Shown: positions 9,986 through 57,483 of the stretch, piece after piece
Numbering within the stretch: position 1 is the stretch's first letter
Layout of the letters: the number at the start of each line of letters is the position of its first letter
IMG/VR virus record: IMGVR_UViG_3300047510_001118
Span: 62,001-126,000 of that record
DNA: 64,000 nucleotides
Reading direction: 5' to 3' (one strand)
Program-made: the position numbers and the translations under genes
Notes under the pieces: model-generated
What the model was told of the DNA's origin: nothing
The model's database searches: none
Seen by the model: the letters and a program-made list of their open reading frames with translations, nothing else

Positions 9986-9994
9986 GGTTGTTCC

Positions 9995-21432: not shown

Positions 21433-22454
21433 TTGTAGTATCCTTGTCTATAGAAGTTTACCTGATCAATCTTTTCGCCAGGTTCGGGTCTCAGTGTTAC
21501 ATTCTTAATCTGTTTCTCTACACCGTCACAGATATAGTAATGCTTACAGTTTAAACAGTCTTTGGTTTTATAATAAGTTCTATTGCGTTTGAATGCCGCC
21601 GCATCATACAGAGCCTTGTGTGGGTCCGCACGATACACCTGTGGATCTATGTCACCATTGTACACAGCAATATTCCAATCGTAGATGTCATAGATATGTT
21701 GATAGTAATTACAGACATACTGCTCATAGCCCTTCATAAAACAATAGGGCGTGTATCGAACATTGATCTTCTCTACAATATCTTTAAGTAAGTCTATGGC
21801 CTGATGTACATAGGGAGTAACTTCAGCATAGTCTATGGTTTCCTGTGCGCCAGCATCGTCCCAATAGTTCAGTGTTAGGAAGTTTACTTCAAATGGTTTG
21901 AGTTCTTTGACTAGCTCAACAAACTTAGTAGGCAAGCTCTTATAATTCTTATGTGTGACTGTACAGTTAACTCTAACCAACACTCCTAGTTCGTGTGCGT
22001 TTTTAATTGCCTGTACAATGTTCTCAAAGCCTTTGCGATGTCCTACTAGGATGTTGTGGCTTTCTTTATCATAGCCGTGTACTGAGAACAGTATTTCTTC
22101 TAAGCCGTGCTCTTTGCTTTTACGTAAGAACTCTTTGTCGGCAAACTTGTAGCCGTTGCTCAGTGTGCTGACCTTTAGTCCTTTACTCTTACAGTAGTCC
22201 AGTATGTCAAACCATTGCTTGTGTATACTACTTTCTCCGCCACTGAGATCTGCTTCTTTGATGCCGCAGGCTACAAGATAGTCTATTCGTTGTCGTATGG
22301 CATCGAACTCAGTTACATCATTTAACTGTGTTTTGTAATAGCAGAATTCGCAACGATAGTTACAGTGAGTGCCAGTGTCTAACTTGGCACGTTCACAGAT
22401 TGGTTCGTCACGGTCTATCTGTAACTTGTTGCTGAGTTCGTTGTAAAGTCTCAC
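21429..22454 (-). CDS. radical SAM protein with C-terminal Cys cluster
   Basis: CNYRCEFC, SGGE, SNG; CLNCKHYYICDG. Confidence 0.9.
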   Translation of the reverse strand: MRLYNELSNKLQIDRDEPICERAKLDTGTHCNYRCEFCYYKTQLNDVTEFDAIRQRIDYLVACGIKEADLSGGESSIHKQWFDILDYCKSKGLKVSTLSNGYKFADKEFLRKSKEHGLEEILFSVHGYDKESHNILVGHRKGFENIVQAIKNAHELGVLVRVNCTVTHKNYKSLPTKFVELVKELKPFEVNFLTLNYWDDAGAQETIDYAEVTPYVHQAIDLLKDIVEKINVRYTPYCFMKGYEQYVCNYYQHIYDIYDWNIAVYNGDIDPQVYRADPHKALYDAAAFKRNRTYYKTKDCLNCKHYYICDGVEKQIKNVTLRPEPGEKIDQVNFYRQGYYK

Positions 22455-23271
22455 GTTCTATCTCTTGGTATTGTTGATCAACTGGCACAGGATTGATCAT
22501 ATATTTCTTTTTACTTTCGGCCATTAGTTTAAAACTGCTGATGCTTTCCTTGTAACAGGTTCTACTAAAACTACTACAGTGTTTGACACAGATGCTTTGA
22601 CTGTCAAAAAACTTGTAGCGTATTGGATCTGTCAGTGCGTCTTTTAATGATGTATTGTGTAAGTTAGCAAAGGCTACCCTATCGTTAGGTGGTGTGTTGT
22701 CTTTGACAAACTTACAGAATACTACATCGCCATTGGCCATAATCTTAGGCATACTATGGAAGTGGCATTTGAGTTTAGGATCAAACTCTTCTGTTATCTT
22801 TGTGCCTGTGTAGTTAAACTCGTAACCATAATCTCTACGCTCTAGTTTATATTGTATGCCGTTAGCATCTAATTCTTCTAAACGTTTATGTACAATATCA
22901 AATAGATTCTTATCCATTGCTGTTAGTTCTTTGAAACGAGCAGGAGTATCTCCGTAGTAACTGACACAGAGTTTAATATTGTTCATAGGAACTTCTGCCA
23001 ACTTACGTACATTAACTGCGGTAACATTAGTAAACACAATGGTATACTTCATATGTTCGTTGAGGAACGCTAACATTTCATAGATGTCAGGATGTAAGAA
23101 TGGCTCTCCCTTTGCGGGGATAAGATCTATTTCAGTAATGCCCATTTCCTTTGCTTCAAGTATTATTCGTTTGAACAAGTCCAACGGCATATACTTTGGT
23201 TCAGTAATGTCTTTGGCTTTACAAAAATAACACTTGAAGTTACAGTACTCTAGGATCTCTACAACAATCAT
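22408..23271 (-). CDS. radical SAM protein with twitch/SPASM-like C-terminus
   Basis: CNFKCYFC, KGEPFLHP; C...GDVVFC...C. Confidence 0.88.
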   Translation of the reverse strand: MIVVEILEYCNFKCYFCKAKDITEPKYMPLDLFKRIILEAKEMGITEIDLIPAKGEPFLHPDIYEMLAFLNEHMKYTIVFTNVTAVNVRKLAEVPMNNIKLCVSYYGDTPARFKELTAMDKNLFDIVHKRLEELDANGIQYKLERRDYGYEFNYTGTKITEEFDPKLKCHFHSMPKIMANGDVVFCKFVKDNTPPNDRVAFANLHNTSLKDALTDPIRYKFFDSQSICVKHCSSFSRTCYKESISSFKLMAESKKKYMINPVPVDQQYQEIERETLQRTQQQVTDRP

Positions 23272-24164
23272 ATTATACCTTTAAGTATGTTCACAAGGTC
23301 GTCACTGGGTCTTAGACACAGACTATCAAAGTCGTTTTCTATATCCCAGTTGCGCCAGTACAATCCGCGATCCTCGTCCCAATAATCGATATTGTGGAAA
23401 ATTACGGATTTACCGTAATATTTACATTCTGCTATGAACCTGGGACTACAATCCCATTTACGCTTAACTGGAGTATAGACGTAAGTGCCAAACTGTTCAA
23501 ACAAGTCGTTCACAGGAGGAATTACAAAAGTAAATCCATTTATAGATTTAGGCATATTCTCTTTGTTTGTTATAACTAGGATGTCATTGCCGTACTGCGT
23601 TAGTTCTTCATAGGAGTCTAACTGTCTACAGTTCTTAGTAGCATAGACCAACACTGAATCCTTACTAGGACCCAGTGTTTTTAATCTATCAAATAGAATC
23701 TTCTTTTTATAATTGACACCGTTTTTCTTTACAAGTTCGTAGACGCGATTGTCTTGTAAGATCCATACATTATCTTTGTCGTTGTCTTTGATTTCTTTAT
23801 TGCCGCAGGCAAAGTAAAAGATGTTATCAAATAACAGTGTCACCGGCCGCATATTAACTATGCCGCCGTCTGTGAATATTATGTTGCGTCCCTTGACCAA
23901 TGTAGGTCTATTGGCAAACACTGTGTTAGATTTGATATCCTCTATCTCTTCGTCTGTGAAATTGTATTTGCCACGGATACTGGATTCAAACGTTGGCCAG
24001 TCAATGTCTTCGCAGAGCAGTACTCCAACTTTGAAATCATTTCTTAGAGTAAAGTAATAATCTATAACTTCATAGGTGTGTCCACAGATGCCATGATTGT
24101 TATTGCTCCAAGAGTAACTAAGCCAAAGATCATAGGAGTCGTCTAACTGTGTTATCTTAGACAT
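23268..24164 (-). CDS. hypothetical, possible GT-B-like glycosyltransferase
   Basis: C-terminal SPRFIAECKYYGK resembles the GT-B donor-binding E..G motif. Confidence 0.4.
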   Translation of the reverse strand: MSKITQLDDSYDLWLSYSWSNNNHGICGHTYEVIDYYFTLRNDFKVGVLLCEDIDWPTFESSIRGKYNFTDEEIEDIKSNTVFANRPTLVKGRNIIFTDGGIVNMRPVTLLFDNIFYFACGNKEIKDNDKDNVWILQDNRVYELVKKNGVNYKKKILFDRLKTLGPSKDSVLVYATKNCRQLDSYEELTQYGNDILVITNKENMPKSINGFTFVIPPVNDLFEQFGTYVYTPVKRKWDCSPRFIAECKYYGKSVIFHNIDYWDEDRGLYWRNWDIENDFDSLCLRPSDDLVNILKGII

Positions 24165-24940
24165 GCTCGCACCATAGGACAGTTTTCTGTGAGAGTATAG
24201 TTACCTAGTCCGTTGACAACTATATCGTTGTAGCGTAATTGTATCGAGTCAGTGTTGAGATTGTAGGGTTCTTCTACAGTCACAGTCTTACCATAAAAGA
24301 ATCCTTCTGGTATGATCCTGTTGTTGGTATCTCTGACTACATGGATGTAATGAACAGCATCAATTTGATCAAATAGATCTCCAATGCCTGTATGTTGTTT
24401 TTTTAATAAGATAGGACGATTGAATTGTGTCTTTAATCTTTCATATTCATAGCGTATGTACTTTGGATCAAGACAACTGACAAATACGCCAGATTGACTC
24501 TTACAGGGTCTGAATATTTCAAAGTTTAATTTTAAGATACATTCTACATCGTAGCGTTGATATGGATACAATCCATAGTAGGTAACTGTGCGATTATTCT
24601 TATAACGAAACATCTCGTGTGTGTCATTGCTGAAACAATGTATTTCGTTGGTTAAGAATTCTTTACAGTCATAGAAAGTGTTTACATCGAGGATGAGTGT
24701 ACGATCAAGATTGAGTTTATATAACTCAACTAAGGTAACTGGAATTATGTTGTCAACTACAGTGTCGTATTTTGCCGTAAGGATTTCAACGACTAGTTCT
24801 AGATCCTTTGCGTCTATACCAACAATATAAAACTTTGCGTCAACATACTTTCTTAGAAATTTAAAGTATTCGAAACAGTAAAACAATGTTCCGTTGATCT
24901 TATTGTGTGGTTTAAACTTGTATACAACACCATAGTTCAT
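24152..24940 (-). CDS. hypothetical, paralogue of 23268-24164
   Basis: GTLFYCFEYF and NNRIIPEGFFYGK align with the neighbour's GHTYEVIDYY and SPRFIAECKYYGK. Confidence 0.45.
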   Translation of the reverse strand: MNYGVVYKFKPHNKINGTLFYCFEYFKFLRKYVDAKFYIVGIDAKDLELVVEILTAKYDTVVDNIIPVTLVELYKLNLDRTLILDVNTFYDCKEFLTNEIHCFSNDTHEMFRYKNNRTVTYYGLYPYQRYDVECILKLNFEIFRPCKSQSGVFVSCLDPKYIRYEYERLKTQFNRPILLKKQHTGIGDLFDQIDAVHYIHVVRDTNNRIIPEGFFYGKTVTVEEPYNLNTDSIQLRYNDIVVNGLGNYTLTENCPMVRACLR

Positions 24941-24942
24941 TA

Positions 24943-25560
24943 TCAGAAGTTTGCGTAGAATCGCTCTAAGAATCGCTCTTCTATGGCTTTGATTTCTTCA
25001 ACTGTGGTAGCCGCACGTATTTCATTTCTAAATGCCGTGAACTTACGTTCTAAGTGTGCCACTGCTTCAATTTCGTCTTTGTAGTTGAGATAATCTTCTA
25101 ACTTGGCGATTAGTTTTTCGTCGCCAGTTTCTAAAATTTCTAGATACTTTTCTTCACGATTTTCATTAGTGATAAAATATCCGTTGGCGGCCATGTCGTT
25201 GTTTAATACAATAAATCCGTACATGGCAAAGCCGCTGATCTTAGATAGTTCTGGAGTTACCAGCATACGTATTTTGACTACAGACGCATCTCTGGCTTCT
25301 TGAATTGGATCTGTTTCTTTTAGATCAATGACATCAAACTCTCCAGGTAATACTTCTCCTGTCTGTAGAGTCTTGTGGATGTGTACTCGCTTGCCTTCCA
25401 TCAGTGCCTGTTTGATCAACTGATGGCTCATGTAAGAAAGACGCAGAATCTTTTCGTCTTTGTCTGCTTGATTATCTAGTGTGTTTTGAGTTACGTTTGT
25501 TACAAACCAATGTGTGCCACGGTCTTGTACTGTGGCTAAATCATATATGATGCTACTCAT
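24943..25560 (-). CDS. hypothetical protein adjacent to the Cys-rich S74 protein
   Basis: 205-aa ORF with a helical C-terminus. Confidence 0.65.
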   Translation of the reverse strand: MSSIIYDLATVQDRGTHWFVTNVTQNTLDNQADKDEKILRLSYMSHQLIKQALMEGKRVHIHKTLQTGEVLPGEFDVIDLKETDPIQEARDASVVKIRMLVTPELSKISGFAMYGFIVLNNDMAANGYFITNENREEKYLEILETGDEKLIAKLEDYLNYKDEIEAVAHLERKFTAFRNEIRAATTVEEIKAIEERFLERFYANF

Positions 25561-25561
25561 C

Positions 25562-26350
25562 TTATTCCTTTACTGTTGTTGGTTCGCTCCAAAGTTCTCC
25601 GTTGTTAGGTAGTCTGTCGTAGTGTACTCTAAAGAACCCTTGCTCATCGATTTCAACAGCATGAGAGTATTCGCTTTGTAATATCTCTCCAGCCATAACA
25701 CCGATATACTTTGTTTCAGGATCCCATGTATAAGTGTAACTGTAGATATTAATTCCTTCACGTGTGCCAAGGAATTTGATGTTTTGTTTTAGACGCTCGT
25801 CACTGTAGTTACAGCCGCAGTCTCTGTGGCAGTTACATACAGCATTACAGGTACAGTCTGAGTTACAAATACAATCTTGACGCATGATGTTGTATTTGTC
25901 ACGTAGAGCAATCCAGTGACTGTCGTCAATTAGTGCGCCTGAGCTATAACTATTGGCAGGAGTCGTAGCATCTGCCGGGTTAGTATACACAGCCGCGGTG
26001 CTACCTACAGGCTCAGTAACGTTATTTGTCTGTTGAACCATTAATTCTAAATCGTTAATCTGTGCGGCGGAAATAACAGTGCTAGTGCCGAACGCACTAG
26101 TTTGGCGATTAGCAACACCGCTGAAATGATTAACTGTTCCGCTGTTAGTTGTATGTGTTTTATAGCGGTCTAATTCTGCATTTATTTTACTACGTAAATC
26201 TTCGATATCAGCCGCAGTAACACGACCTGTGGTTACAGCAAATTCTGTACTAGATGACAATGGTCTGTTTGTAGAGCAGGCTCCACGATGATTTGAACAG
26301 GTTGTTGTTCCTGAACTATTTAAATTACAAAATGTTCCGCTACAAGCCAT
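25562..26350 (-). CDS. Cys-rich fibre-like protein with C-terminal S74 intramolecular chaperone/autoprotease
   Basis: (CxCxxx)4 at 25802-25873 immediately followed by YSDERLKQNI...GVMAGE...VHY. Confidence 0.8.
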   Translation of the reverse strand: MACSGTFCNLNSSGTTTCSNHRGACSTNRPLSSSTEFAVTTGRVTAADIEDLRSKINAELDRYKTHTTNSGTVNHFSGVANRQTSAFGTSTVISAAQINDLELMVQQTNNVTEPVGSTAAVYTNPADATTPANSYSSGALIDDSHWIALRDKYNIMRQDCICNSDCTCNAVCNCHRDCGCNYSDERLKQNIKFLGTREGINIYSYTYTWDPETKYIGVMAGEILQSEYSHAVEIDEQGFFRVHYDRLPNNGELWSEPTTVKE

Positions 26351-26351
26351 T

Positions 26352-27524
26352 TTAATATATTTCCTCTTGTTTGATTTCCTCGGGCTTTTTGGCTAGTTCT
26401 TTGTCTAGATAAGCCTGAACTGTGCGATCGATTTCCCCAAATGCTTTGTAGAAACCGCACATGTTATTTACCCAACGATCAGTCCAACGATCAAAGTAAT
26501 CTTCTTTCTTGCTGTTATCTAAGCTCGAAACAGGGCAAATCATACAGGTTGTGGCCACACAGCCCTTACAGATATCGCTGACTTCACGTGCTTTTGGCTG
26601 ATAAGTTGTGGCCATTTTAATAACTTTATCGATAAAATCAGCATCATCGATATTGCCGCCCGATGCCATTTGCTCTTTATTTGGACTATATAACGAACCG
26701 TGGCAAGCGTAACTGTTACCATCTACGTTGATAGCATGCATTGATGCTCCGCTTTGGCAATGACTCTTAGCATCCCCACCGTCAAACCAAGTACACAAAT
26801 GATGTCCGTATTTTTTAACAAACGCAATCTCTTCCTTGGCAATCATCAACATCTCTTTGCGGAAGTCTGCTACCATATCCGGCATTTTATCTATAGGAAG
26901 ATCTGTTACGTAGTCAATCGTAGGTGCGTACTCAACGCGGCAGTTAGGGCCAATGTCTTTGAATCTCTCATACAATGTTTTATAATCTTGCCAAGCATTG
27001 TAGATACCTCTCATTGTTGATAGGGGAACTGTGGCCTTTAGGCTTAGGTTAACACCCTTGCGAGCAAAGTATTCAAAGTTCTCAATAACCTGTGCTGATG
27101 TAGGTTTACCGCTGTGTGTTAATCGGAACTTGTCGTTGATGTTCTTACCATCGTAACTAAACTGAATGTTTAGTTTTTTAATATTGATATTATCTAATAC
27201 ATGTTCTAAACGTTTACGATTGTAACCGTTGGTATAGATATGGAATCCAATGTTTTCAATGTGTTGGAATTCCTTCATAATATCAATAATTAGATCTCCA
27301 TTAAGGGTTGGCTCACCGCCCCAAAAGTCGATCATCAGTTCATCATAGTTCTCTTTGAACCAAGCACTTTCGTAGAACTCTCTGATACGTACTTTTAAAA
27401 TATCTACTTTATCGTCGAGTCGGCGTGTATCTGTCTTTACACCTTCGAAGCAATATGAGCAACCTAGATTACACAGTGCTGTGGTTGTAACTTCTAGTGT
27501 AAATGATCCTTTTGATACTTTCAT
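26352..27524 (-). CDS. radical SAM/SPASM maturase
   Basis: CNLGCSYC, FWGGEP, YTNG; SPASM-like CQSG...GNSYACH...CKGC...CMIC...C. Confidence 0.92.
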   Translation of the reverse strand: MKVSKGSFTLEVTTTALCNLGCSYCFEGVKTDTRRLDDKVDILKVRIREFYESAWFKENYDELMIDFWGGEPTLNGDLIIDIMKEFQHIENIGFHIYTNGYNRKRLEHVLDNINIKKLNIQFSYDGKNINDKFRLTHSGKPTSAQVIENFEYFARKGVNLSLKATVPLSTMRGIYNAWQDYKTLYERFKDIGPNCRVEYAPTIDYVTDLPIDKMPDMVADFRKEMLMIAKEEIAFVKKYGHHLCTWFDGGDAKSHCQSGASMHAINVDGNSYACHGSLYSPNKEQMASGGNIDDADFIDKVIKMATTYQPKAREVSDICKGCVATTCMICPVSSLDNSKKEDYFDRWTDRWVNNMCGFYKAFGEIDRTVQAYLDKELAKKPEEIKQEEIY

Positions 27525-27751
27525 TTGATATCCTCAATGTTTAATATTTCGTCTAAGACTGACATCATTGTTTCCTCGCTGACCTTTTCTGGTTCTTCTT
27601 GGATGATGCCTAGCATATCTTCAGCAAGTTTGGCTAGATATTCTGCTTCCTCTTGAAACAGTTCTTCGTTGGACAAATGCTTGCTGGCTTCTAATAAGTG
27701 GAAGCTCGCATTGTATAGTGCCCTATTCATTTTCTTAATACTCGTAGCCAT
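27521..27751 (-). CDS. small acidic helical protein between two SPASM enzymes
   Basis: 76 aa, overlaps both neighbours. Confidence 0.65.
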   Translation of the reverse strand: MATSIKKMNRALYNASFHLLEASKHLSNEELFQEEAEYLAKLAEDMLGIIQEEPEKVSEETMMSVLDEILNIEDIK

Positions 27752-28760
27752 CTTCGTATTCCTTTTCCATTTCTTCTTTAACGACTTGTTTAAAATCTGG
27801 GTTATTTTTTAGGGCCGCTGTCATGCGTTTAACTTCTCTATACGTATATTTATAGATATCGCAGAGCTCGACTATAGGACCTTGGTTTTTAATCTGCTCA
27901 AATAAACAGCCCTTTTTACAGTAATTCTTAACTTCACAGGTCTGACAAACGGGCATTTGGGCATATTTGGGTATAGCCGCTATCATGTCCGGACTGTCTT
28001 TAAAACGTGTACAGGGCACAACTTTGTTTTCGCTGAACATAAACATATTTGTACCAGCACCGCAGTTATCCGTAGTAACACCTTTGCTGTGATAATCCAA
28101 AAAGTGTCTTAGATAGAACAGCACAAAGTAAGGCATGCCCTGTTCTGGATTGGCAATATACCAGTCAAACATCTCAGTAATGCCTACTTTGAGTTTATCA
28201 ACGCTGTCCTGATCCCAAGTACCTACGTCACGTACCAGTGTAAGTTCTGGGTTAAATCCAAAGTGCTCTTTGATCCATAGATGATTTTCCAATAAGTTAT
28301 AACAGCCTTTGGTTATCATGCTGTGGCAACTGACTTCGGGTAACTTCTTAAACAGTTCTCGCTTTTCAAAGAAACGTTGTTTAGTTCCTTTGCCGTTTAA
28401 CTGTAGTCTATTCTTATCCTGCCATAGTCCATCAAAACTGATAGAAACTTCTATGTTGTTTCTAACTAGGAAGTCTACAGTTTCTTCTGTAAGCAGTAAT
28501 CCATTTGTAGGCATGAATAGTTTGATGTTGCCATCATCACGCACACCTTCTAGTATCTCTTCTATCAAATCTATCTGTAGCAAGGGCTCGCCACCAAAGA
28601 AGTCTATCTTAATTGTTTCATCTGGATATTGCTCACGCATCTTACGGAACTCAGCCAAATACAACACAGGGTCAATACGATTCTTAGACCACTTGTCTAC
28701 TCCGCAATATGAGCAGTTAAGATTACATTTTTCGGATAGAACAACTAATAATGTCTTCAC
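27735..28760 (-). CDS. radical SAM/SPASM maturase
   Basis: CNLNCSYC, FFGGEP, PTNG; CGAG...VVPC...CQTC...CKKGC...C. Confidence 0.92.
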   Translation of the reverse strand: MKTLLVVLSEKCNLNCSYCGVDKWSKNRIDPVLYLAEFRKMREQYPDETIKIDFFGGEPLLQIDLIEEILEGVRDDGNIKLFMPTNGLLLTEETVDFLVRNNIEVSISFDGLWQDKNRLQLNGKGTKQRFFEKRELFKKLPEVSCHSMITKGCYNLLENHLWIKEHFGFNPELTLVRDVGTWDQDSVDKLKVGITEMFDWYIANPEQGMPYFVLFYLRHFLDYHSKGVTTDNCGAGTNMFMFSENKVVPCTRFKDSPDMIAAIPKYAQMPVCQTCEVKNYCKKGCLFEQIKNQGPIVELCDIYKYTYREVKRMTAALKNNPDFKQVVKEEMEKEYEDGYEY

Positions 28761-29494
28761 TGTCTATATACCTTGTTTAACAACAGCACAACATCTAGCA
28801 AAGGTACATCAAACTCTTTGGCCAATACTTCTGTGTCTTTGGGTAGGCATGGGCCTCCGAACCCTCGCTCTCCATCTGGTCCCGGCACTTCAAAATGATG
28901 TGTGCCCATCCATGGATGATTGCGTAGGATACCTGTAACCATTGGCCAGTCTGCGCCTACTTGATTTGCCACATCATACATCTGATTCATAAATGTAAGT
29001 TTGGTAGCATAAAAACTGTTCATACAGTATTTGGCCATACAGGCATTTTCCACTGTGGTCAACACTACTCTGTCTAAATTAACTGTGCTCAGTGTTTCAT
29101 ATATATTTAATAGACGCTGTGCTTTATCCGAGTCTCCACCTATGATCACCATAGGAGGATTTACAAAGTCTTCGTTGGCTGTGGCTCTACTTAAAAACTC
29201 AGGATTAAACAACACGTCATAATCTTTGATATACTTTGGCAGTATCGTACTCTTAACTACTGTGATGCCTTGATAGCCTGTGGCTTTGATTTGATCCAGC
29301 ACAGAGGTCAGTGTGGAATAATTACTGTCATCTGTAGGTGTAGGTACACAGACAAATATAGCCAGGGGCTCTTGTCTACAGATTGCTTCAACAGTTACAG
29401 TATTATATTTTGGGTCTGAGTAAACAGCAGTGGTTTTAGAAAAGCCAAACTTTACTGCCTTGCCCACCATGCCTAGGCCAATTATTCCAATCAT
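28757..29494 (-). CDS. UDP-glucose/GDP-mannose dehydrogenase family (short)
   Basis: [29 protein letters not shown]. Confidence 0.92.
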
Positions 29495-29528: not shown

Positions 29529-29574
29529 CTCTTTTAACATATTTGTGGAATATTTATTGGTTAAATACTATACT

Positions 29575-30777
29575 ATGATTAACAAAGATCCCTTCAAAAA
29601 ACTAATCCAAGACATGAAAGACAACGGCAAATACCGTGTCTTCAACGACATTGTACGCGAAAACGGCAAGTTCCCACAGGCAATATGGTACGGCCCGTAC
29701 AATATTAAAAACATCATCAATTGGTGTTCAAACGACTATCTAGGCATGGGACAGCATAAAGTTGTTCTTGATGCCATGCACACCGCTCTTGACCATACAG
29801 GATCGGGATCAGGCGGTACTCGTAACATTGGCGGTACCAGTCACTATCACGTTGCTCTAGAGCGTGAACTAGCCAGTCTACATAATAAGACAGGCGCACT
29901 GTTATTCAGCAGTGCCTATGTGGCTAACGAATGGACTTTAATTGCCCTATCGAAGATCATAGACAATATAGAATTCATATCAGATGCCAATAATCATAAC
30001 AGTCTTATTATTGGTATGAGTCACAGTCGTGCGCCCAAACAGGTATTCAAACACAACGACCTAGCAGACTTAGAAAACAAATTAGCCAACAGTAAACTCA
30101 GTGGACGCACTCCTTGTATTGTATTCGAAAGTGTTTACAGTATGGACGGAGATGTGGGATTGATTGAGGAAATCTGTGATCTAGCAGATAGATATCATGC
30201 CATTACATATATTGATGAAGTACACGCTGTGGGACTATATGGTGACGAAGGCGCAGGTAAATTAGAAGAGTTGGGCTTACAGGATCGTGTTGACATAGTT
30301 AACGGTACACTTGGTAAAGCATTTGGTACACAAGGTGGGTACATTGCCGCAGACAAAACAGTGGTAGATGCTATTCGTAGTGTGGCTGCTGGCTTTATCT
30401 TTACAACGAGTATGAGTCCAGTTACCTGTGCTGGAGCCTTGGCCGCAGTAAAATATCTACGTGAACATCAAGACGTTCGCGATCAACATCAACGACAGGC
30501 TCGTAAACTCAAAGAAGAATTAAAGAAAGCAGACTTGCCAGTAATGGACTGTTCAACTACACACATTGTTCCTGTGCTTGTTGGTGATGCTAAACGTTGT
30601 AAGGCAATGAGTGATAAACTGTTAGAACAGTTTAATATCTATGTACAGCCTATTAACTATCCAACTGTAGATGTGGGAACGGAGCGGTTACGTTTCGCAC
30701 CTACTCCGTTTCATGATGATGGAATGATTGAGGATCTAGTTAATGCGTTGAAAGTTGTGTTTAAAGAAAATTATTAA
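29575..30777 (+). CDS. hemA: 5-aminolevulinate synthase
   Basis: [53 protein letters not shown]; ATG 29575 follows TAAATA (29562-29567). Confidence 0.93.
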
Positions 30778-31231
30778 ACCAACCAATCTTGCGACCTTCG
30801 GCGATTCTCTTGTCGTGTTCTTCAACTGAACTAGGATAACGCCAAGCCCACACAGCAACCAATGCCATAAAGATTGCTGTACTAATAATACCAATTGGTT
30901 TAACTCCGCCAGTATACATCAGCACCAAACTCAACGACATCATGCCTAGCATGAAGTATTTCATCTTTAATGGGAACACACGCTTTTGGTTCCAGTTGGT
31001 TAGGAACGGACCAAACAGTTTATGATTGTATAGCCAAGCATGCATCTTAGGACTGCCTTTGGCAAAACAGTATGCGGCAAATACAACAAATGGACTGTAG
31101 GGGATGCCTGGTGTGACAACCCCTACATACGCCATTCCTAGGCTACAGAATCCTAGTATTTTCCAAAAGAATTTTTTCATATAATTATTTAATATAGTCA
31201 AGCCAACTAGGATGACGAACTTGAAAATCAA
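30761..31231 (-). CDS. YbaN/DUF454 membrane protein
   Basis: [35 protein letters not shown]; start probably MKKFF. Confidence 0.85.
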
Positions 31232-31697
31232 GTTGTTTCCGTTTATTGACTAACTCCCAATAGTCTGGCTTCTGAGGTTTAGTCAACGGTTTGATTTTTT
31301 TGTTGTTACCTTTGCTGGCATTACATGGACCGCAGGCAGTAACAGTATTATCAAATGTAGTCTTACCACCGTGGCTGACTGGCAGTACATGATCTAAAGT
31401 ACATTCGCGTTTCTCTAACTTATCACTACAGTATTGACAGGTATATTTGTCACGTAGGAACACGTTGCCTTTAGAAAATCTAACAGTCATCTTTGGCTTC
31501 ATATACTCAGTCAGCATCATCACTGCCGGAACTGGGGTTTCCCATCTAGCCGATCTAACGATCCAACCGTCGTGCCACTCCAGTACTCGTGCTTTGTCGA
31601 GTACCATATATTTGATAGCATCCTGCCAGGTCAATGTGCTCAAAGGCAACCATGACGCTGGTTGGGCATCACTGTTAAGCAAAAGAGTGTCAGCCAT
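31185..31697 (-). CDS. HNH endonuclease
   Basis: RDKYTCQYC...TLDHVLPVSHGG...ACGPCN. Confidence 0.92.
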   Translation of the reverse strand: MADTLLLNSDAQPASWLPLSTLTWQDAIKYMVLDKARVLEWHDGWIVRSARWETPVPAVMMLTEYMKPKMTVRFSKGNVFLRDKYTCQYCSDKLEKRECTLDHVLPVSHGGKTTFDNTVTACGPCNASKGNNKKIKPLTKPQKPDYWELVNKRKQLDFQVRHPSWLDYIK

Positions 31698-51956: not shown

Positions 51957-52034
51957 GGGCCTCTAGCTCATGTTGGTTAGAGCAGTGGACTCATAATCCA
52001 TTGGTGCGGAGTTCGACTCTCCGGGGGCCCACCA
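51957..52034 (+). tRNA. tRNA CAT anticodon, probably Ile2 (lysidine, reads AUA)
   Basis: cloverleaf with GTGGA-CTCATAA-TCCAT arm, GTTCG T-loop, encoded CCA; resembles ileX rather than Met tRNAs. Confidence 0.9.
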
Positions 52035-52038
52035 GATC

Positions 52039-52123
52039 GCGACTGTGGTGAAATCGGTAGACACAAGAGACTTAAAATCTCTCGCTGCAAGGCGTGCCAG
52101 TTCGATTCTGGCCAGTCGCACCA
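52039..52123 (+). tRNA. tRNA-Leu(TAA)
   Basis: AGAGA-CTTAAAA-TCTCT arm, long variable arm, CCA. Confidence 0.93.
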
Positions 52124-52129
52124 AACAAT

Positions 52130-52206
52130 CTGCCCGTAGCTCAACCGGATAGAGCAACGGCCTTCTAAGCCGTAGGTTGGGGGTTCGATTCCCTCCGGGC
52201 AGGCCA
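52130..52206 (+). tRNA. tRNA-Arg(TCT)
   Basis: ACGGC-CTTCTAA-GCCGT arm, CTGCCCG/CGGGCAG acceptor stem, CCA. Confidence 0.93.
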
Positions 52207-53064: not shown

Positions 53065-53916
53065 ATGACTAATTTGGCAACTAAACCCGCAGGCTATCGT
53101 GTACTGAGTCTTGAGCAAGAAAGTCCTGCTCAAACACGTGAAACAGACGCAGAGATCATTGAACGCTTGCGTGAGCGTTTTGACATCCTTGATGACATGA
53201 CTCGTGCTGTAAAGAAAGGCGCTGTACGTGCAATGATCGTCAGTGGTGCTCCAGGCGTAGGTAAGAGCTTTGGTGTTGAGAAAGTTCTGGGCAAGCATGA
53301 TCTAATGGCCAATATCGCCAACGATGAAAAGCTCAAGAAGTACGAGATCGTCAAGGGTGCGATGTCAGCAATTGGCTTGTACTCAAAGCTCTATGAGTTC
53401 TCAGCAGAGAAGAACATCCTAGTGTTCGACGACTGTGACTCAGTACTGTTAGATGATCTTAGCCTTAACATTCTAAAGGCTGCTCTAGATACAAGTAAGA
53501 AGCGTACCATCCATTGGAACACTGACAGCAGACTGTTACGCAGTGAAGGTGTGCCCAATTCGTTTGAGTTCAAGGGTGGTGCTATCTTTATTACCAATAT
53601 CAACTTTCAGAACATCAAGAGCAAGAAGTTACAGGATCACTTGGCAGCTCTGGAAAGCCGTTGCCACTACATTGATCTAACCATACACACAGAGCGTGAG
53701 AAGATGTTGCGCATCAAACAGATCGTAGGCGATGGCATGCTCAACGAGTATGAGTTCTCAGAAGAGCAGACAGCAGAGCTTATTGGGTTTATTGACCTTA
53801 ACAAGAAGCGTCTACGCGAGCTGAGCCTGCGTACAGTACTAAAGACTGCAGACCTTATGCGCAGTTTCCCTGGGGACAAATGGCAGCGTGTAGCACAGAT
53901 CAGCCTAATGAAGTAA
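53065..53916 (+). CDS. P-loop AAA-like ATPase
   Basis: Walker A GAPGVGKS, Walker B LVFDDCD, FITN. Confidence 0.85.
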   Translation: MTNLATKPAGYRVLSLEQESPAQTRETDAEIIERLRERFDILDDMTRAVKKGAVRAMIVSGAPGVGKSFGVEKVLGKHDLMANIANDEKLKKYEIVKGAMSAIGLYSKLYEFSAEKNILVFDDCDSVLLDDLSLNILKAALDTSKKRTIHWNTDSRLLRSEGVPNSFEFKGGAIFITNINFQNIKSKKLQDHLAALESRCHYIDLTIHTEREKMLRIKQIVGDGMLNEYEFSEEQTAELIGFIDLNKKRLRELSLRTVLKTADLMRSFPGDKWQRVAQISLMK

Positions 53917-53917
53917 C

Positions 53918-53934
53918 GCTAGTTCGCTCCTAGC
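53918..53934. other. hairpin displaying TTCGCTC(C), antisense to the early RBS
   Basis: GCTAG-TTCGCTC-CTAGC. Confidence 0.6.
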
Positions 53935-53937
53935 CTT

Positions 53938-53965
53938 AGAGGATCCTTCGGGGTCCTCTTTTTTT
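53938..53965 (+). terminator. intrinsic terminator ending the early array
   Basis: AGAGGATCC-TTCG-GGGTCCTCT followed by a T-run. Confidence 0.9.
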
Positions 53966-54176
53966 ATCAAAAATTTTTTCGTCGAGGAGGTTAGAAAAAA
54001 TCTTTTCGAAAAAAAATTCGGTGAGGGGTAGTAAAATAAAACTGTTGTAAAAAAACAACATAGTGGTAACAAATCACCAGGCCACCGAAAAAATACCCTA
54101 TACTTTAATTTTTTACGGTGCAGTTTTTTAAAACCAGAGTGGACCCATTCGGGCCAAGTTCCTCGCTATATACTGT

Positions 54177-54398
54177 ATGATCAGATTCCCCCAAGAAACT
54201 ATCCAAAAGATTGTTCAAACACTCGCAGCCATAACAGCCACAGGTTTTATTACCTTTACAGTAACGCACCTACATGCGCCATTGATATCCTGGCTGTTAT
54301 GGTTTACACATTGGATTGTTGCCATCCCCATAGCCTTAGGCACTGTGTTTTGGCTAGCACCCCTATACAGTCGGTGGCTTAAAAAACTGGTTGGATAA
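54177..54398 (+). CDS. two-TM small protein (DUF2798-like)
   Basis: hydrophobic 73-aa ORF. Confidence 0.55.
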   Translation: MIRFPQETIQKIVQTLAAITATGFITFTVTHLHAPLISWLLWFTHWIVAIPIALGTVFWLAPLYSRWLKKLVG

Positions 54399-54469
54399 GT
54401 ATATAAGTACTCCGCAAATTTTTTTTGCGGGCTATTTTTTAAAACCGGGCAGGACCCATTGGAGCAACT

Positions 54470-54748
54470 GTGGCAAAACGTAAATCTGCAACTGTAGACA
54501 TAGAAACAAACCTCCCCAACGACGACTTTTCAAAACTCACTGAAGACCAAACTCTGGATCTATTAGAACTAACGTTCACAGCACTGTGTCAACGCTTAGA
54601 GCAAGGTGGAGTAGACCCAGAACTGATCACTGGCACACTGTTTGGCATATTTGCTGATCGTATGGCTGAGCTAGGAGATCGTGAATCATTTGACTGTATG
54701 TTAGCCGAAGCCATCGAAACACCATGGCAGGACTATACTCTACACTAA
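54470..54748 (+). CDS. hypothetical protein
   Basis: GGAG RBS, GTG start. Confidence 0.65.
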   Translation: MAKRKSATVDIETNLPNDDFSKLTEDQTLDLLELTFTALCQRLEQGGVDPELITGTLFGIFADRMAELGDRESFDCMLAEAIETPWQDYTLH

Positions 54749-54869
54749 CGAGTTTCTGTACAGTCTTTTAATGATATTCACTATGTACTTTATGGTCATT
54801 TAGTCATATAATACTGATACATACTAATGCAATACCTAGTATGTTTTATCAACACAAAGGAGTATTATT

Positions 54870-54941
54870 ATGTGGACCAAACCAACTGCAACTGAAATGC
54901 GTTACGGTTTTGAAGTAACCATGTACATCATGAACAGATAA
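54870..54941 (+). CDS. pqqA: PQQ precursor peptide
   Basis: hand translation MWTKPTATEMRYGFEVTMYIMNR with the conserved E-x3-Y; AAGGAG RBS. Confidence 0.92.
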   Translation: MWTKPTATEMRYGFEVTMYIMNR

Positions 54942-54965
54942 TCTCTGTCACTGTGTATAAGGAAC

Positions 54966-54989
54966 AGCCCACATAATAGTGGGCTTTTT
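54966..54989 (+). terminator. intrinsic terminator after pqqA
   Basis: AGCCCAC-ATAATA-GTGGGCT-TTTT. Confidence 0.8.
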
Positions 54990-55042
54990 CTTGGCTAAAA
55001 ATTTGTTTTTGACCGCTACGCGGCTTCGCCGCTACGTGACTC

Positions 55043-56482
55043 TCAGACAGGATCACCTGTGCCAATATTACTGAGGAATTGGCGCAGTTTAGTTGAATCT
55101 GCCTGTGCCCGTATTTTGGGCAAGGGTGCGCCCTGTGTGGGATCAGTGACTTCTCCAGTTTCTGGATCTGTTGCCGTATTACTGGTGCGTTTGATCTGAT
55201 CTAATATAGCAGTACTCTTGGGTCTATAGTCTGTGTCGCCTTCTATGCCCGGATCTGTGATACGCAGTGTGTCAATGTCAAAGTCTAGATCAATCTTCAT
55301 GCCCACACCACTTGATGAGCGTGTCTTCATCAACTGTATCTGATACTTGCCACGCTCACGCATAGCACGGCTGGTAAAGATACCTATGACGTTGTCTGCT
55401 GTTTGAATTTTACTGAGTCCGCCTGAAATGTGGCTGTGATCAAACTCTACTTCTTCTACAGCCGCACGGTTTAACTGGCTGGCAGTGACAAACACACACT
55501 GTTTTTCCATGGCTAGATTTCTGAGTTCTTCACTGACAAACTTGTCCTTGACAAACAGATCTGCGGGGCTGATCTTTTTGTTTATGGGCATCATTAGATC
55601 TAGGTAGTCCACTAATAACACGTCTACTTTACGATCTGTTTTGATTTCATACTCTTTTAAGTAAGCACGTATGTCATTGGCGTTCTTGCCTGAAGCCATG
55701 TATTTGACTTGGAATGCGCCCGATTTCTTGCCAATCATCTTGACCTTCATTTCCACGCCGTCTAAATCTTTGAAAATGTCCTTGGTTGATATGCCCGTGG
55801 TCATTGAATCTACACGCATACTTACCAGTGCTTCACTGAGCTCAAAGGTCAAGTACATGACGTTCAAGCCCGCCAGGGCCCAATTAACGCCCAAGTTGGC
55901 CAAGAATAGACTTTTACCTGCGCCCGAACCGCCAGCAAAGATATTCAACTCTCCGCGATTCATTCCGCCAAATAGGCGTTTGTCCACAGTTTCCCAACCA
56001 GTCTTTACCTGTCCGTTTTTGTCTTTTAGGCCTAGTAGTCTGCCCTTGGGATCACGCCAGTAGTCTGTGCCCAGATCTTTTTGAAGTCCTATCTGTACGG
56101 CCTGTTTGATCATGTCTTCCACAGGACCATAGTTGCCTTCTTCCAGCATGTCTGCGGCTTTGAGTATGGCACGTTCTAGACCCTTGTGTCGGGTAAATGT
56201 TTCAAACTCTGTGAGCAGCCAATCATAGTGCTCGTCTTTGAGCTGTCCTGGATCTTTGAGTTCTGTTTTGGTTGCGGCCACCACCATGTCAAATGTGGGC
56301 AGAGCATTGTGTTCTGACACATAGTTGTTGATGAATTCCGCTGAGTCCTGTAGTCTGCGATCAAATAGAGTGTGATCAAAAATGCTTTGGCAGCGCACAA
56401 AAGTGGCGGCATCACTGAGCATCATTTCCAAATACAGTTTCTGTATGTCATGTCCGTAGTCTGTGTTTTGTCTTGTTGTCAT
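55043..56482 (-). CDS. replicative DnaB/gp41-like helicase
   Basis: GGSGAGKS, VDYLD, TASQLNR, LMKTR. Confidence 0.93.
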   Translation of the reverse strand: MTTRQNTDYGHDIQKLYLEMMLSDAATFVRCQSIFDHTLFDRRLQDSAEFINNYVSEHNALPTFDMVVAATKTELKDPGQLKDEHYDWLLTEFETFTRHKGLERAILKAADMLEEGNYGPVEDMIKQAVQIGLQKDLGTDYWRDPKGRLLGLKDKNGQVKTGWETVDKRLFGGMNRGELNIFAGGSGAGKSLFLANLGVNWALAGLNVMYLTFELSEALVSMRVDSMTTGISTKDIFKDLDGVEMKVKMIGKKSGAFQVKYMASGKNANDIRAYLKEYEIKTDRKVDVLLVDYLDLMMPINKKISPADLFVKDKFVSEELRNLAMEKQCVFVTASQLNRAAVEEVEFDHSHISGGLSKIQTADNVIGIFTSRAMRERGKYQIQLMKTRSSSGVGMKIDLDFDIDTLRITDPGIEGDTDYRPKSTAILDQIKRTSNTATDPETGEVTDPTQGAPLPKIRAQADSTKLRQFLSNIGTGDPV

Positions 56483-56490
56483 ATACTATA

Positions 56491-57483
56491 TTATATCTCC
56501 GAGAACCAACGTTTTGCCATTAATTTGACTTTTAATTCTGACTGCTCCCTGTGCTGATAGATCTGCTCCAAACACCAAATCTTACCATAGCGTTGAACAG
56601 CATCATGTGCGTCTTTGCAGCCTGGAAACTCAGGCAGGCTCACTGACCAACCCAATTCCAGTGCTCGTGACACTGTGCGACTGCCATCTGTGTCACGATC
56701 TGGAACCAGTATGATTTCACGATCCAATCTATTGATCAGCATGGCCTGTTTTTCCATGACGTCTGCGCCCAATATGGCCACACCGTCAATGCTGAGTGCG
56801 TCCATGGGTCCTTCAACCACTACCACAAACTGTCTGTCACCCTGCTGATCTAAATTGAACACATAGCCTGGCTTTTGATCTGAAATGTACTTGGGCTTGC
56901 CCTCTACGACCTTGCGGGCAGTATTGCCCACTATGTTGCCTTGATAACGGAATGGTATGATCACACGATCTTGATAGCCATTTAAGGGTGTCCAATAGAA
57001 GTCATCCATGGGGTCAAAGCCTCGACTGTACACATAGTCTATGACCTGATTGAACCACTCTGCCAAATCCGGGGGCAGTTGATCTAAACTGATCAACCAC
57101 TGCCTGATTGGCAAACTGCCCTGGGGCAATTCACGCTGTTCAAACGTGGGCAGAGTCACAGCGGCCAGGGCCTGCTCATCTGCTTCTATTTTCATGGCTT
57201 CAAGGCTGAGTTTGGTTATGGCATCGTCTGGTGCGCCCATCCACTGCAGCAGTTGACGCATCTTACGTGGCAAATGACGCCCTGCTACATAACTGGCTTT
57301 GTATCCACAGTTAAAGCAGTGATAACTACAGCCGTCACTGTTGCGTATAATACCGCCACGCTGACGTGTGTCTAGGGTAGTGCCGTTATGATGGCAGCAC
57401 ACAGCGTTGAACTTGGTCCAACCGCTGGGTGTCTGTTTCCGTTTTGCGGGAAGGTACGTATAGATCGCATCGACGATACTCAT
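56491..57483 (-). CDS. DNA primase (gp61-like)
   Basis: N-terminal CCHH...HCFNC Zn finger; TOPRIM VEGPMDAL, DRDTDG. Confidence 0.9.
   Translation of the reverse strand: MSIVDAIYTYLPAKRKQTPSGWTKFNAVCCHHNGTTLDTRQRGGIIRNSDGCSYHCFNCGYKASYVAGRHLPRKMRQLLQWMGAPDDAITKLSLEAMKIEADEQALAAVTLPTFEQRELPQGSLPIRQWLISLDQLPPDLAEWFNQVIDYVYSRGFDPMDDFYWTPLNGYQDRVIIPFRYQGNIVGNTARKVVEGKPKYISDQKPGYVFNLDQQGDRQFVVVVEGPMDALSIDGVAILGADVMEKQAMLINRLDREIILVPDRDTDGSRTVSRALELGWSVSLPEFPGCKDAHDAVQRYGKIWCLEQIYQHREQSELKVKLMAKRWFSEI

What the first reader, a model, noticed from the sequence alone, without database searches (positions are those of the whole stretch)
54870..54941. Stand-alone phage pqqA
Seen: a 23-aa PqqA with its own RBS and terminator, and no pqqBCDE in the window. 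Established: PqqA is consumed stoichiometrically to make PQQ, the cofactor of methanol and glucose dehydrogenases. Inference: it raises precursor supply in a PQQ-using host. The sequence resembles methylotroph-type PqqA as I recall it, which sits oddly with the alphaproteobacterial-type ALAS and makes host identity informative.
Basis: partly seen in the sequence, partly recalled or inferred. Interest (0 to 1): 0.6.

Follow-up and report, generated by a model that had tools for sequence, protein, structure and literature searches.

The report
Phage copy of PQQ precursor gene
This kind of phage "helper" gene has been reported before, and it also sits, mostly unannotated, in the cultured phages of methanol-eating Methylophilaceae bacteria found here.

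Summary
Window 54870-54941 (+) encodes a 23-aa peptide that passes both curated PqqA models. It has an AGGAG ribosome-binding site 7 nt upstream and a hairpin plus T-run terminator at 54966-54990. It lies between phage replication genes in a 278-kb IMG/VR virus record that has no pqqB, pqqC or pqqD, no true pqqE, and no PQQ alcohol dehydrogenase.

It is not unusual. At least 120 IMG/VR contigs carry the same kind of ORF. It evolves under strong purifying selection (dN/dS about 0.11, synonymous sites saturated). None of the 50 records tested has pqqC. The peptide type is that of Methylophilaceae. The same gene is present, unannotated, in cultured OM43/LD28 phages (Venkman, Melnitz, MEP301, MEP401/402, P19250A). 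These hosts keep 2-6 mostly orphan pqqA copies but a single pqqC.

The best reading is an auxiliary metabolic gene that keeps PQQ precursor supply, and so methanol oxidation, going during infection of a freshwater Methylophilaceae host. Viral pqqA was already published (Lake Baikal, 2020), so this is a new member of a known kind. Expression and function were not tested.

The parts
54768..54860 (+). Conserved upstream 'cassette' that travels with pqqA. It includes a perfect TATAAT at 54807-54812 and is a putative promoter/5'-UTR region.
   Evidence: About 75-78% identical over roughly 175 nt (upstream region plus gene) in four other viral contigs: L252, L116, L089 and L011. The motif occurs only once in the 278-kb genome. 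The sigma-70 scan found no full promoter on the + strand, so promoter function is inferred.
54816..54850 (+). Predicted 5' stem-loop of the transcript (stem ACAUACU/AGUAUGU).
   Evidence: It appears in both the MFE and the centroid fold of 54816-54992. For the whole stretch z = -3.34, and 0 of 200 shuffles fold as well. The stem is invariant while the loop length and sequence differ among the five aligned viral loci. There is no covariation.
54858..54862 (+). Ribosome-binding site AGGAG, 7 nt before the ATG.
   Evidence: Read directly from the sequence. AAGGAG-like sites lie at the same place in the aligned viral loci and in cultured methylophages.
54870..54941 (+). pqqA coding sequence: 23 codons plus a TAA stop. 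It encodes the PQQ precursor peptide with Glu15 and Tyr19.
   Evidence: PF08042 34.6 bits and TIGR02107 35.1 bits, both above their cut-offs. It is the only match in the whole record.
54966..54990 (+). Intrinsic-terminator-like hairpin plus T-run, lying between pqqA and the convergent DnaB gene.
   Evidence: Terminator scan. A comparable GC hairpin plus T-run follows pqqA in L116, L089 and L011.

Best explanation
This is a functional, phage-borne copy of pqqA that acts as an auxiliary metabolic gene. During infection the phage transcribes a short, self-contained mRNA with a 5' hairpin, an RBS, 23 codons and a terminator. The peptide enters the host's own PqqD/PqqE/PqqB/PqqC pathway, where one peptide is consumed for each PQQ made. 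This sustains or raises the supply of PQQ for the periplasmic methanol dehydrogenases (XoxF/MxaF) that provide the energy of a methylotrophic host. The host is most likely a freshwater member of the Methylophilaceae. Shown here: the gene's identity, its intact signals, its viral context, the absence of the other pqq genes, its recurrence and purifying selection in phages, the match to the host peptide type, and the presence of pqqC in that host family. Inferred: expression, processing by host enzymes, the benefit to the phage, and the identity of the host.
For: Identity. Signals.

Viral context:
- A phrog_1250 ATPase (53065-53916), a DnaB-like helicase (55043-56482), a Toprim primase, a virion structural protein and a phage helicase lie in the window.
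- The DnaB is about 50% identical to that of Pseudomonas jumbo phage PA5oct.

Other pqq genes:
- No pqqB, pqqC or pqqD, no true pqqE and no PQQ alcohol dehydrogenase in the record.
- The pqqC model was validated on 5 of 5 Methylophilaceae isolates.

Recurrence in phages:
- At least 120 IMG/VR contigs carry intact 23-25-aa PqqA ORFs.
- 0 of 50 of their records have pqqC or a PQQ alcohol dehydrogenase. Three of these are 96-99% complete: 36.6 kb, 38 kb and 356 kb.

Selection:
- There are 103 distinct viral nucleotide sequences.
- On codons not fixed by the search pattern, pS is 0.72, pN is 0.23 and dN/dS is about 0.11.
- Phe14 is kept in 102 of 103 sequences, using both codons.

Host type:
- The commonest viral peptide is identical to the commonest Methylophilaceae peptide.
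- Of 80 listed genome titles with this peptide type, 52 are named Methylophilaceae taxa and only 4 name another family.
- Of the 12 GenBank phage records that hit, 9 are cultured Methylophilales/Methylophilaceae phages. Their ORFs are intact and pass TIGR02107.

Host pathway:
- pqqC is present in 117 of 121 genomes of that family, including 1.2-1.4-Mb streamlined ones.
- These hosts keep 2-6 pqqA copies for one pqqC.
- Five 1.2-1.3-Mb genomes each keep 3 copies. In four of them every copy lies at least 108 kb from pqqC.
- The literature reports 3-12 pqqA copies against a single pqqBCDEFG set (PMC4109929).

Habitat and stability:
- The phage DNA occurs in freshwater and lake metagenomes across 12 studies.
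- Contigs from two independent lake studies span 53352-55362 at about 97% identity, with pqqA in place.

Precedent: viral PqqA was proposed to boost methanol oxidation in Lake Baikal methylotroph phages (PMC7678222).
Against: - No expression evidence: none of the listed sequencing runs that hold this DNA is RNA.
- The promoter scan found no full sigma-70 promoter on the + strand. Only a TATAAT with a poor -35 is visible.
- It is not shown that PqqA supply limits PQQ synthesis in these hosts. Engineering reports describe only modest gains from over-expressing pqq genes (introduction of PMC9851590).
- The exact peptide variant (Tyr12, Ile20, Arg23) was not seen in any sampled cellular genome. 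The nearest match is 20 of 23.
- The host is inferred, not demonstrated.
- The record is only 75% complete.
- Most close relatives of this phage lack pqqA at this site: 1 of 80 DnaB-linked loci has it. It is therefore dispensable for the lineage.
Confidence: 0.72

Rival explanations
1. The gene has the same function, but the host is a PQQ-using freshwater bacterium outside the Methylophilaceae. Examples would be another Burkholderiales or a gammaproteobacterial methylotroph.
For: The host assignment rests on peptide type, the hosts of cultured phages and habitat only. A few genome hits carry other names: an Acidovorax MAG, a Pseudomonadales MAG, Thiotrichaceae and unresolved 'Gammaproteobacteria'. 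The Tyr12 variant occurs in two such unresolved genomes. The nearest cultured relatives by DnaB infect Pseudomonas and Agrobacterium.
Against: Of 80 listed titles, 52 are Methylophilaceae and a further 16 are unresolved beta/Burkholderiales MAGs. The window peptide shares Ala7-Thr8 and Met21-Asn22 with the Methylophilaceae type, not with the Tyr7/Phe20 variants. All nine cultured-phage records that hit infect Methylophilales or Methylophilaceae.
Confidence: 0.2
2. The peptide is a decoy. It binds the host's PqqD/PqqE and blocks PQQ synthesis, or diverts it, as part of host takeover.
For: It cannot be excluded by sequence. The window variant differs from host peptides at three or more positions, including Phe12 to Tyr.
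Against: Glu15 and Tyr19, which form the cross-link, are intact. 23 viral loci encode a peptide identical to the commonest host peptide, which is what a substrate would look like rather than an inhibitor. Shutting off the energy supply of an obligate methylotroph would hurt phage production (inference).
Confidence: 0.04
3. The peptide is the substrate of the phage's own radical-SAM/SPASM enzymes (window 14.7-28.8 kb) and yields a product other than PQQ.
For: The window holds at least 11 radical-SAM ORFs. Two of them resemble SPASM peptide maturases: PapB-like at 113.7 and 80.4 bits.
Against: - All of them score far below any equivalog cut-off, PqqE included (at most 41.8 bits against 381).
- No PqqD/RRE domain is present in the record.
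- They lie 26-40 kb away on the other strand, inside a nucleotide-sugar gene cluster.
- In relatives the radical-SAM count and pqqA do not co-vary. G059 has 18 radical-SAM matches (15 over the Pfam cut-off) and no pqqA, while G060 has 2 and carries pqqA.
Confidence: 0.03
4. It is non-functional passenger DNA recently picked up from a host, or a stretch of homology used for recombination or integration into host pqqA copies.
For: Host genomes offer many pqqA copies as possible targets. The gene sits in a variable region between DnaB and the ATPase gene.
Against: Synonymous sites among viral copies are saturated while the peptide is conserved. Selection therefore acts on the peptide, not on nucleotide identity. 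The gene has its own conserved upstream region, RBS and terminator, shared with other viral contigs. The arrangement is stable in lake populations from independent studies.
Confidence: 0.03

Closest known systems
Viral PqqA of Lake Baikal methylotroph phages (VP_266; Coutinho et al. 2020, PMC7678222). pqqA is also listed among virus-encoded genes in reservoir sediments (PMC13188868).
   Same: A PqqA precursor peptide gene on an uncultured freshwater phage genome without the rest of the pathway. It was proposed to boost PQQ and methanol oxidation in Methylophilaceae hosts.
   Different: VP_266 also encodes a methanol dehydrogenase. This record has none, and neither do 50 other pqqA-bearing viral records. 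This one is a 278-kb jumbo-type phage with a PA5oct-like replication module.
Unannotated pqqA ORFs in cultured Methylophilales/Methylophilaceae phages: Venkman, Melnitz, MEP301, MEP401/402 and P19250A.
   Same: They encode 23-24-aa peptides, 74-83% identical to the window peptide. They have an RBS, pass TIGR02107 and stand alone.
   Different: These are unrelated phage lineages of 35-142 kb with different flanking genes. Their peptides carry the host-like Phe12. The gene is not annotated in any of the five records inspected. PQQ biosynthesis is not discussed in the papers on MEP301, MEP401/402 and Melnitz.
Orphan pqqA copies of Methylophilaceae genomes (Beck et al. 2014, PMC4109929).
   Same: Free-standing 23-aa genes away from pqqBCDE, with the same peptide type. 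There are 2-6 copies per genome against one pqqC.
   Different: They are chromosomal. Similarity to the window begins at or up to about 30 nt before the RBS, and the conserved upstream region of the viral cassette is not shared.
Canonical PqqA of pqqABCDE(F) operons, such as those of Klebsiella pneumoniae and Methylorubrum extorquens (own knowledge of the family; Pfam PF08042, TIGR02107).
   Same: Peptide length, the W-x-K-P leader, the Glu-x3-Tyr core and full-length matches to the models.
   Different: It is not the first gene of an operon, and no pathway enzymes are encoded by the same genome.
Cyanophage psbA (an analogy from own knowledge, not a family relationship).
   Same: A phage copy of a fast-consumed component of the host's energy-harvesting machinery, widespread across unrelated phages of one host group.
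   Different: psbA encodes a structural reaction-centre protein and has experimental support. Here the product is a sacrificial cofactor precursor and no experiment exists.

Membership tests
PqqA (PF08042 / TIGR02107) | Score above the curated cut-off of the family models | tested here: met
   PF08042 34.6 bits against a cut-off of 21.1. TIGR02107 35.1 bits against a cut-off of 20, covering the full model length.
PqqA (PF08042 / TIGR02107) | Very short ribosomal peptide (about 20-40 aa) from a real translatable ORF | tested here: met
   23 codons with an ATG start, AGGAG 7 nt upstream and a TAA stop.
PqqA (PF08042 / TIGR02107) | Conserved Glu-x-x-x-Tyr pair that is cross-linked to form PQQ | tested here: met
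   Glu15 and Tyr19 lie in the motif G-F-E-V-T-M-Y. The spacing matches the model consensus.
PqqA (PF08042 / TIGR02107) | Encoded next to pqqBCDE | tested here: not met
   The 278-kb record has no pqqB, pqqC or pqqD and no true pqqE. This feature is not universal in the family. Methylophilaceae carry mostly orphan copies (PMC4109929), so it does not exclude membership.
PqqA (PF08042 / TIGR02107) | Bound by PqqD, cross-linked by PqqE and converted to PQQ | not testable with these tools
   The peptide (23 aa) is below the 30-residue minimum advised for complex prediction, so no job was sent. This needs biochemistry or genetics.
Phage auxiliary metabolic gene | Lies inside a bona fide phage genome, flanked by phage genes | tested here: met
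   It is an IMG/VR virus record. DnaB, a primase, a phrog_1250 ATPase, a virion structural protein and a phage helicase lie in the window. The replication module is shared with 389 viral contigs.
Phage auxiliary metabolic gene | Close homologue of a host metabolic gene, and the host has the rest of the pathway | tested here: met
   Up to 20 of 23 residues and about 87% nucleotide identity to Methylophilaceae pqqA. pqqC is present in 117 of 121 genomes of that family. Host identity is itself inferred.
Phage auxiliary metabolic gene | Maintained by selection in phages | tested here: met
   dN/dS is about 0.11 over 103 distinct viral sequences on codons not fixed by the search pattern. The gene is present in at least 5 unrelated cultured phage types.
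Phage auxiliary metabolic gene | Expressed during infection and changes host metabolism | not testable with these tools
   No RNA run holds the sequence, and no cultured host-phage pair exists for this phage.

The most novel reading that the evidence does not exclude
pqqA may be a near-universal but overlooked signature gene of phages that infect Methylophilaceae, the methylotroph counterpart of cyanophage psbA. It would have been acquired repeatedly by unrelated lineages, from 35-kb phages to 364-kb jumbo phages. It is routinely missed because it is only 72 nt long. It could serve as a host-prediction marker and as a handle on viral control of aquatic methanol oxidation. The Tyr12 viral sub-lineage, with its own conserved upstream cassette, would then be a pqqA that has been evolving within phages for a long time.
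Probability: 0.55. Interest if true: 0.55.

Novelty: new member of a known kind. Interest (0 to 1): 0.38.

Why it matters
For this window, the gene gives the best available clue to the host: a freshwater Methylophilaceae. It also adds a jumbo phage to the viruses thought to prop up methanol oxidation.

More generally, the checks suggest that stand-alone pqqA is common on viral contigs. It is also present but unannotated in the cultured OM43/LD28 phage records found by the search. Viral influence on PQQ-dependent C1 metabolism may therefore be under-counted, simply because gene callers skip a 23-codon ORF. Cultured pairs such as OM43 with Venkman or Melnitz make the idea directly testable.

Tried and rejected
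A degenerate DNA pattern was used instead.
- Near-identity DNA search against GenBank phages found only tRNA matches.
- Synteny: the window's flanking proteins are not found next to pqqA in the 120 viral loci, apart from two distant DnaB hits and one small-ORF hit. Only 1 of 80 DnaB-linked relatives keeps pqqA nearby. There is therefore no conserved pqqA neighbourhood beyond the small ORF 54470-54748.
- A phage-wide promoter motif was rejected: the upstream motif occurs once in the genome.
- A known RNA family in 54300-55300: none at E<=1.
- A phage PqqE or PqqD partner was rejected.
- Linkage with the radical-SAM array was rejected.
- A phage methanol dehydrogenase, as in Baikal VP_266: none here or in 50 other records.
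- ALAS as a host clue was rejected.
- No RNA run was found, so expression could not be examined.
- Complex prediction was not used, because the peptide is shorter than the 30 residues the tool advises.
- The large protein searches were not used, because the family models settled the identity.
- No alternative genetic code was used.
The search patterns fix several residues (Trp2, Lys4, Pro5, Arg11, Gly13, Glu15, Thr17, Tyr19), so conservation of those residues in the pattern-derived sets is not evidence.

Full report
**1. Observation**

The ORF at 54870-54941 (+) translates to a 23-residue peptide, MWTKPTATEMRYGFEVTMYIMNR. Two curated models support it:
- Pfam PF08042 PqqA: 34.6 bits against a cut-off of 21.1, E 1.8e-8.
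- NCBIfam equivalog TIGR02107: 35.1 bits against a cut-off of 20, matching the full model.

In a six-frame search of the whole genome record it is the only match (E 5.1e-8), so it is not a chance ORF. AGGAG lies at 54858-54862, 7 nt before the ATG. A 7-bp GC-rich hairpin at 54966-54985 followed by a T-run is called as a terminator. Glu15 and Tyr19, the residues that become PQQ, are present.

**2. Context**

The window is bases 62001-126000 of a 278,126-bp IMG/VR virus record (linear, CheckV about 75% complete).

pqqA lies between these genes:
- an ATPase gene of phage family phrog_1250 (53065-53916);
- two small ORFs (54177-54398 and 54470-54748);
- a convergent DnaB-like helicase (55043-56482) and a Toprim primase (56491-57483).

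A virion structural protein (5367-6680), a phage helicase (62316-63776) and three tRNA genes (51957-52206) are also in the window. The helicase is about 50% identical to that of Pseudomonas jumbo phage PA5oct and to Agrobacterium phage Atu_ph07.

The whole record has no pqqB, pqqC or PqqD match at E<=1. The PqqE model hits only generic radical-SAM genes, at most 41.7 bits against a cut-off of 381. There is no PQQ-dependent alcohol dehydrogenase. The pqqC model rang above its cut-off in 5 of 5 Methylophilaceae isolates, so its silence in the phage is meaningful.

**3. The gene is common on viral contigs**

Every one carries an intact 23-25-aa PqqA ORF.
- None of the 50 parent records tested has pqqC or a PQQ alcohol dehydrogenase. 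Three of these are 96-99% complete: 36.6 kb, 38 kb and 356 kb.
- The flanking genes differ. The window's neighbours are not found beside pqqA elsewhere.

The replication module (ORFs 59703 to DnaB) is shared by 389 viral contigs. Among the 80 best, with 69-87% DnaB identity, only L252 has pqqA within 6 kb. There, as in the window, it sits next to a homologue of ORF 54470-54748. The stretch between DnaB and the ATPase gene varies in length and content among relatives.

Two other large relatives carry pqqA elsewhere in their genomes: G057 (364 kb, 100% complete) and G060. Three have none. The gene is therefore mobile and dispensable within this lineage, but it is repeatedly retained.

**4. Selection**

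Among 113 viral 23-codon copies there are 103 distinct nucleotide sequences. On the twelve codons not fixed by my search pattern, synonymous sites are saturated (pS 0.72) while pN is 0.23, giving dN/dS of about 0.11. Unforced residues are nearly invariant:
- Thr3: 98 of 103.
- Phe14: 102 of 103, with both codons used.
- Met18: 97 of 103.
- Asn22: 96 of 103.

Selection therefore acts on the peptide. This argues against passenger DNA and against a role as nucleotide homology for recombination.

**5. A self-contained expression cassette**

About 100 nt upstream of the ATG are conserved, at 74-78% over roughly 175 nt including the gene, in L252, L116, L089 and L011. The conserved stretch contains three elements:
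- a TATAAT at 54807-54812;
- an invariant ACATACT/AGTATGT stem whose loop varies in length and sequence;
- the RBS.

The motif is unique in the 278-kb genome, so it belongs to pqqA and is not a general phage promoter. The stretch 54816-54992 folds with a 5' hairpin and the 3' terminator hairpin (z = -3.34; 0 of 200 shuffles fold as well). No Rfam family matches. A short mRNA capped by hairpins at both ends is my inference. The sigma-70 scan did not call a promoter on this strand, and the stem shows no covariation.

**6. Host**

The 80 titles shown break down as follows:
- 52 name Methylophilaceae taxa: Methylophilus, Methylotenera, Methylobacillus, Methylovorus, Novimethylophilus, Ca. Methylopumilus, or the family or order.
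- 16 are unresolved Beta- or Burkholderiales MAGs.
- 8 are unresolved Proteobacteria or Gammaproteobacteria.
- Only 4 name another family.

The commonest viral peptide (23 loci) is identical to the commonest peptide in those genomes (56 of 131). The window variant is closest, at 20 of 23, to copies in two Methylophilaceae MAGs. Its Tyr12 is shared mainly with other viral contigs.

Independently, a tblastn of the peptide against 50,697 GenBank phage records hit 12 records:
- Nine are cultured phages of Methylophilales or Methylophilaceae: Venkman, MEP301, P19250A, four Melnitz records, MEP401 and MEP402.
- One is an uncultured spring-water phage.
- Two are weak hits in an 'Acinetobacter phage' assembly.

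In the five records inspected the ORF is intact with an RBS, passes TIGR02107 at 34-41 bits, and is not annotated. In Melnitz, a hypothetical ORF on the opposite strand is annotated over it.

The phage DNA itself is found in freshwater and lake metagenomes from 12 studies. Contigs from two independent lake studies cover 53352-55362 at about 97% identity with pqqA in place. I conclude that the host is probably a freshwater Methylophilaceae (about 0.75). This is inference, not proof.

**7. The host side fits a dosage role**
- pqqC is present in 117 of 121 genomes of the family, including 1.2-1.4-Mb streamlined ones.
- Five named isolates have 2-6 pqqA copies for one pqqC. In three of them a single copy sits about 1.1 kb upstream of pqqC and the rest are orphans.
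- Five 1.2-1.3-Mb genomes each keep three copies. In four of them every copy is at least 108 kb from pqqC.
- The literature reports 3-12 pqqA copies against a single pqqBCDEFG set in this family (PMC4109929).

A stand-alone pqqA is thus the native architecture of these hosts. Retention of several copies in highly reduced genomes suggests that precursor supply matters.

**8. Mechanism proposed**

The phage makes the peptide, and the host's PqqD/E/B/C convert it to PQQ, consuming one peptide per cofactor. This keeps PQQ-dependent methanol dehydrogenases, and hence energy supply, going while host transcription declines. It is the reading already proposed for Lake Baikal phages (PMC7678222).

Rivals considered:
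- **Decoy inhibitor.** Unlikely, because host-identical peptides are common in phages and the reactive residues are kept.
- **Substrate of the phage's own radical-SAM enzymes.** No PqqD or PqqE is present. The enzymes lie 26-40 kb away inside a sugar-modification cluster. Their number does not co-vary with pqqA in relatives.
- **Passenger or attachment DNA.** Contradicted by the selection pattern.

**9. What is known, and novelty**

Viral pqqA was described in 2020 (PMC7678222) and is listed among viral genes in a 2026 reservoir study (PMC13188868). This is therefore a new member of a known kind.

The breadth appears under-appreciated. The gene is present but unannotated in the cultured methylophage records. 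Their papers held in the library do not mention pqqA or discuss PQQ biosynthesis. That generalisation is the most novel reading the data allow.

**10. The ALAS remark**

ORF 29545-30777 is a genuine 5-aminolevulinate synthase (TIGR01821, 568.9 bits against a cut-off of 338.6). None of 41 Methylophilaceae genomes searched reaches the cut-off; the best score is 284 bits and probably reflects BioF/Kbl-type paralogues. ALAS recurs in other large phage records:
- G058 and G059, DnaB relatives of this phage that lack pqqA;
- G020, a separate 356-kb pqqA-bearing viral record.

It is therefore a gene of these large phages and does not contradict the host inferred from pqqA.

**11. Limits**
- No RNA data and no experiment are available.
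- Both collection scans were truncated at 120 rows.
- The pattern searches fix eight residues.
- MAG names are as deposited.
- The record is incomplete.
- The large protein-database searches were not needed and were not run.

Noticed in passing
window 14706-28760 (- strand), with flanks 7672-14709 and 28757-29494: A tandem array of at least 11 radical-SAM ORFs. One has a B12-binding domain, and two resemble SPASM peptide maturases but score far below any curated cut-off. The array sits in a nucleotide-sugar gene cluster: PIG-L deacetylase, epimerase/dehydratase, DegT aminotransferase, Polysacc_synt_2 dehydratase, 2OG-Fe oxygenase and UDP-glucose dehydrogenase. A related 275-kb phage record (G059) has 18 radical-SAM matches, 15 of them over the Pfam cut-off. 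The function is unknown, and it looks unrelated to pqqA.
   Followed up: partly
window 29545-30777 (+), with DUF454 at 30761-31231 (-) and HNH at 31185-31697 (-): A genuine 5-aminolevulinate synthase (TIGR01821, 568.9 bits). None of 41 Methylophilaceae genomes searched reaches the cut-off. It is present in the large viral records G058, G059 and G020. A phage route to the haem precursor, beside a PQQ precursor gene, could mean that both cofactors of the methanol-oxidation chain are targeted; that is speculation.
   Followed up: partly
GenBank phage records MT375522 (about 9977-10045), KX815270 (28085-28153), MZ577097 (about 76134-76205), MW452941 (3316-3384), OP830907 (43050-43118); loci L329-L333: Intact pqqA ORFs with an RBS in cultured OM43/LD28 phages are not annotated. 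In Melnitz a hypothetical ORF on the opposite strand is annotated over the gene, and it sits beside tRNA-Leu. The papers checked do not mention pqqA or discuss PQQ biosynthesis.
   Followed up: yes
window 54768-54860; L252, L116, L089, L011: A conserved region of about 100 nt upstream travels with pqqA in several viral contigs. It holds a TATAAT, then an invariant 7-bp stem with a variable loop, then the RBS. It occurs only once in this genome. It may be a dedicated promoter and a stabilising 5' hairpin.
   Followed up: partly
window 53917-55042, compared with L249-L328: The stretch between the phrog_1250 ATPase gene and DnaB varies in length and content among relatives that share a well-conserved replication module. 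It behaves like an insertion hot spot for small genes.
   Followed up: partly
window 54812-54962 in lake metagenome runs X5, X6 and X7: Summed contig depth over the pqqA bin is 5- to 35-fold above the neighbouring bins upstream (159-554 against about 14-16 in X5 and X6). Many other pqqA copies, host or viral, in the same communities recruit to this short stretch.
   Followed up: no
viral loci such as L010, L017, L021, L025, L031, L082, L029, L063: Other PqqA peptide types occur on viral contigs, with I/V-R-L-G-F-E or L-G-M-E-I-T-A-Y cores and F-K-N/T-R tails. They do not match the Methylophilaceae type and may mark phages of other PQQ-using hosts.
   Followed up: no
genomes G082, G114, G133, G147, G165 (1.2-1.3 Mb Methylophilaceae): Genome-streamlined members keep three pqqA copies each. 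In four of them every copy lies at least 108 kb from pqqC. G133 and G147 have a tandem pair about 200 bp apart.
   Followed up: partly
window 51957-52206: A cluster of three tRNA genes, Met(CAT), Leu(TAA) and Arg(TCT), lies 2.7 kb upstream of pqqA. Melnitz also has tRNA-Arg and tRNA-Leu beside its pqqA.
   Followed up: no
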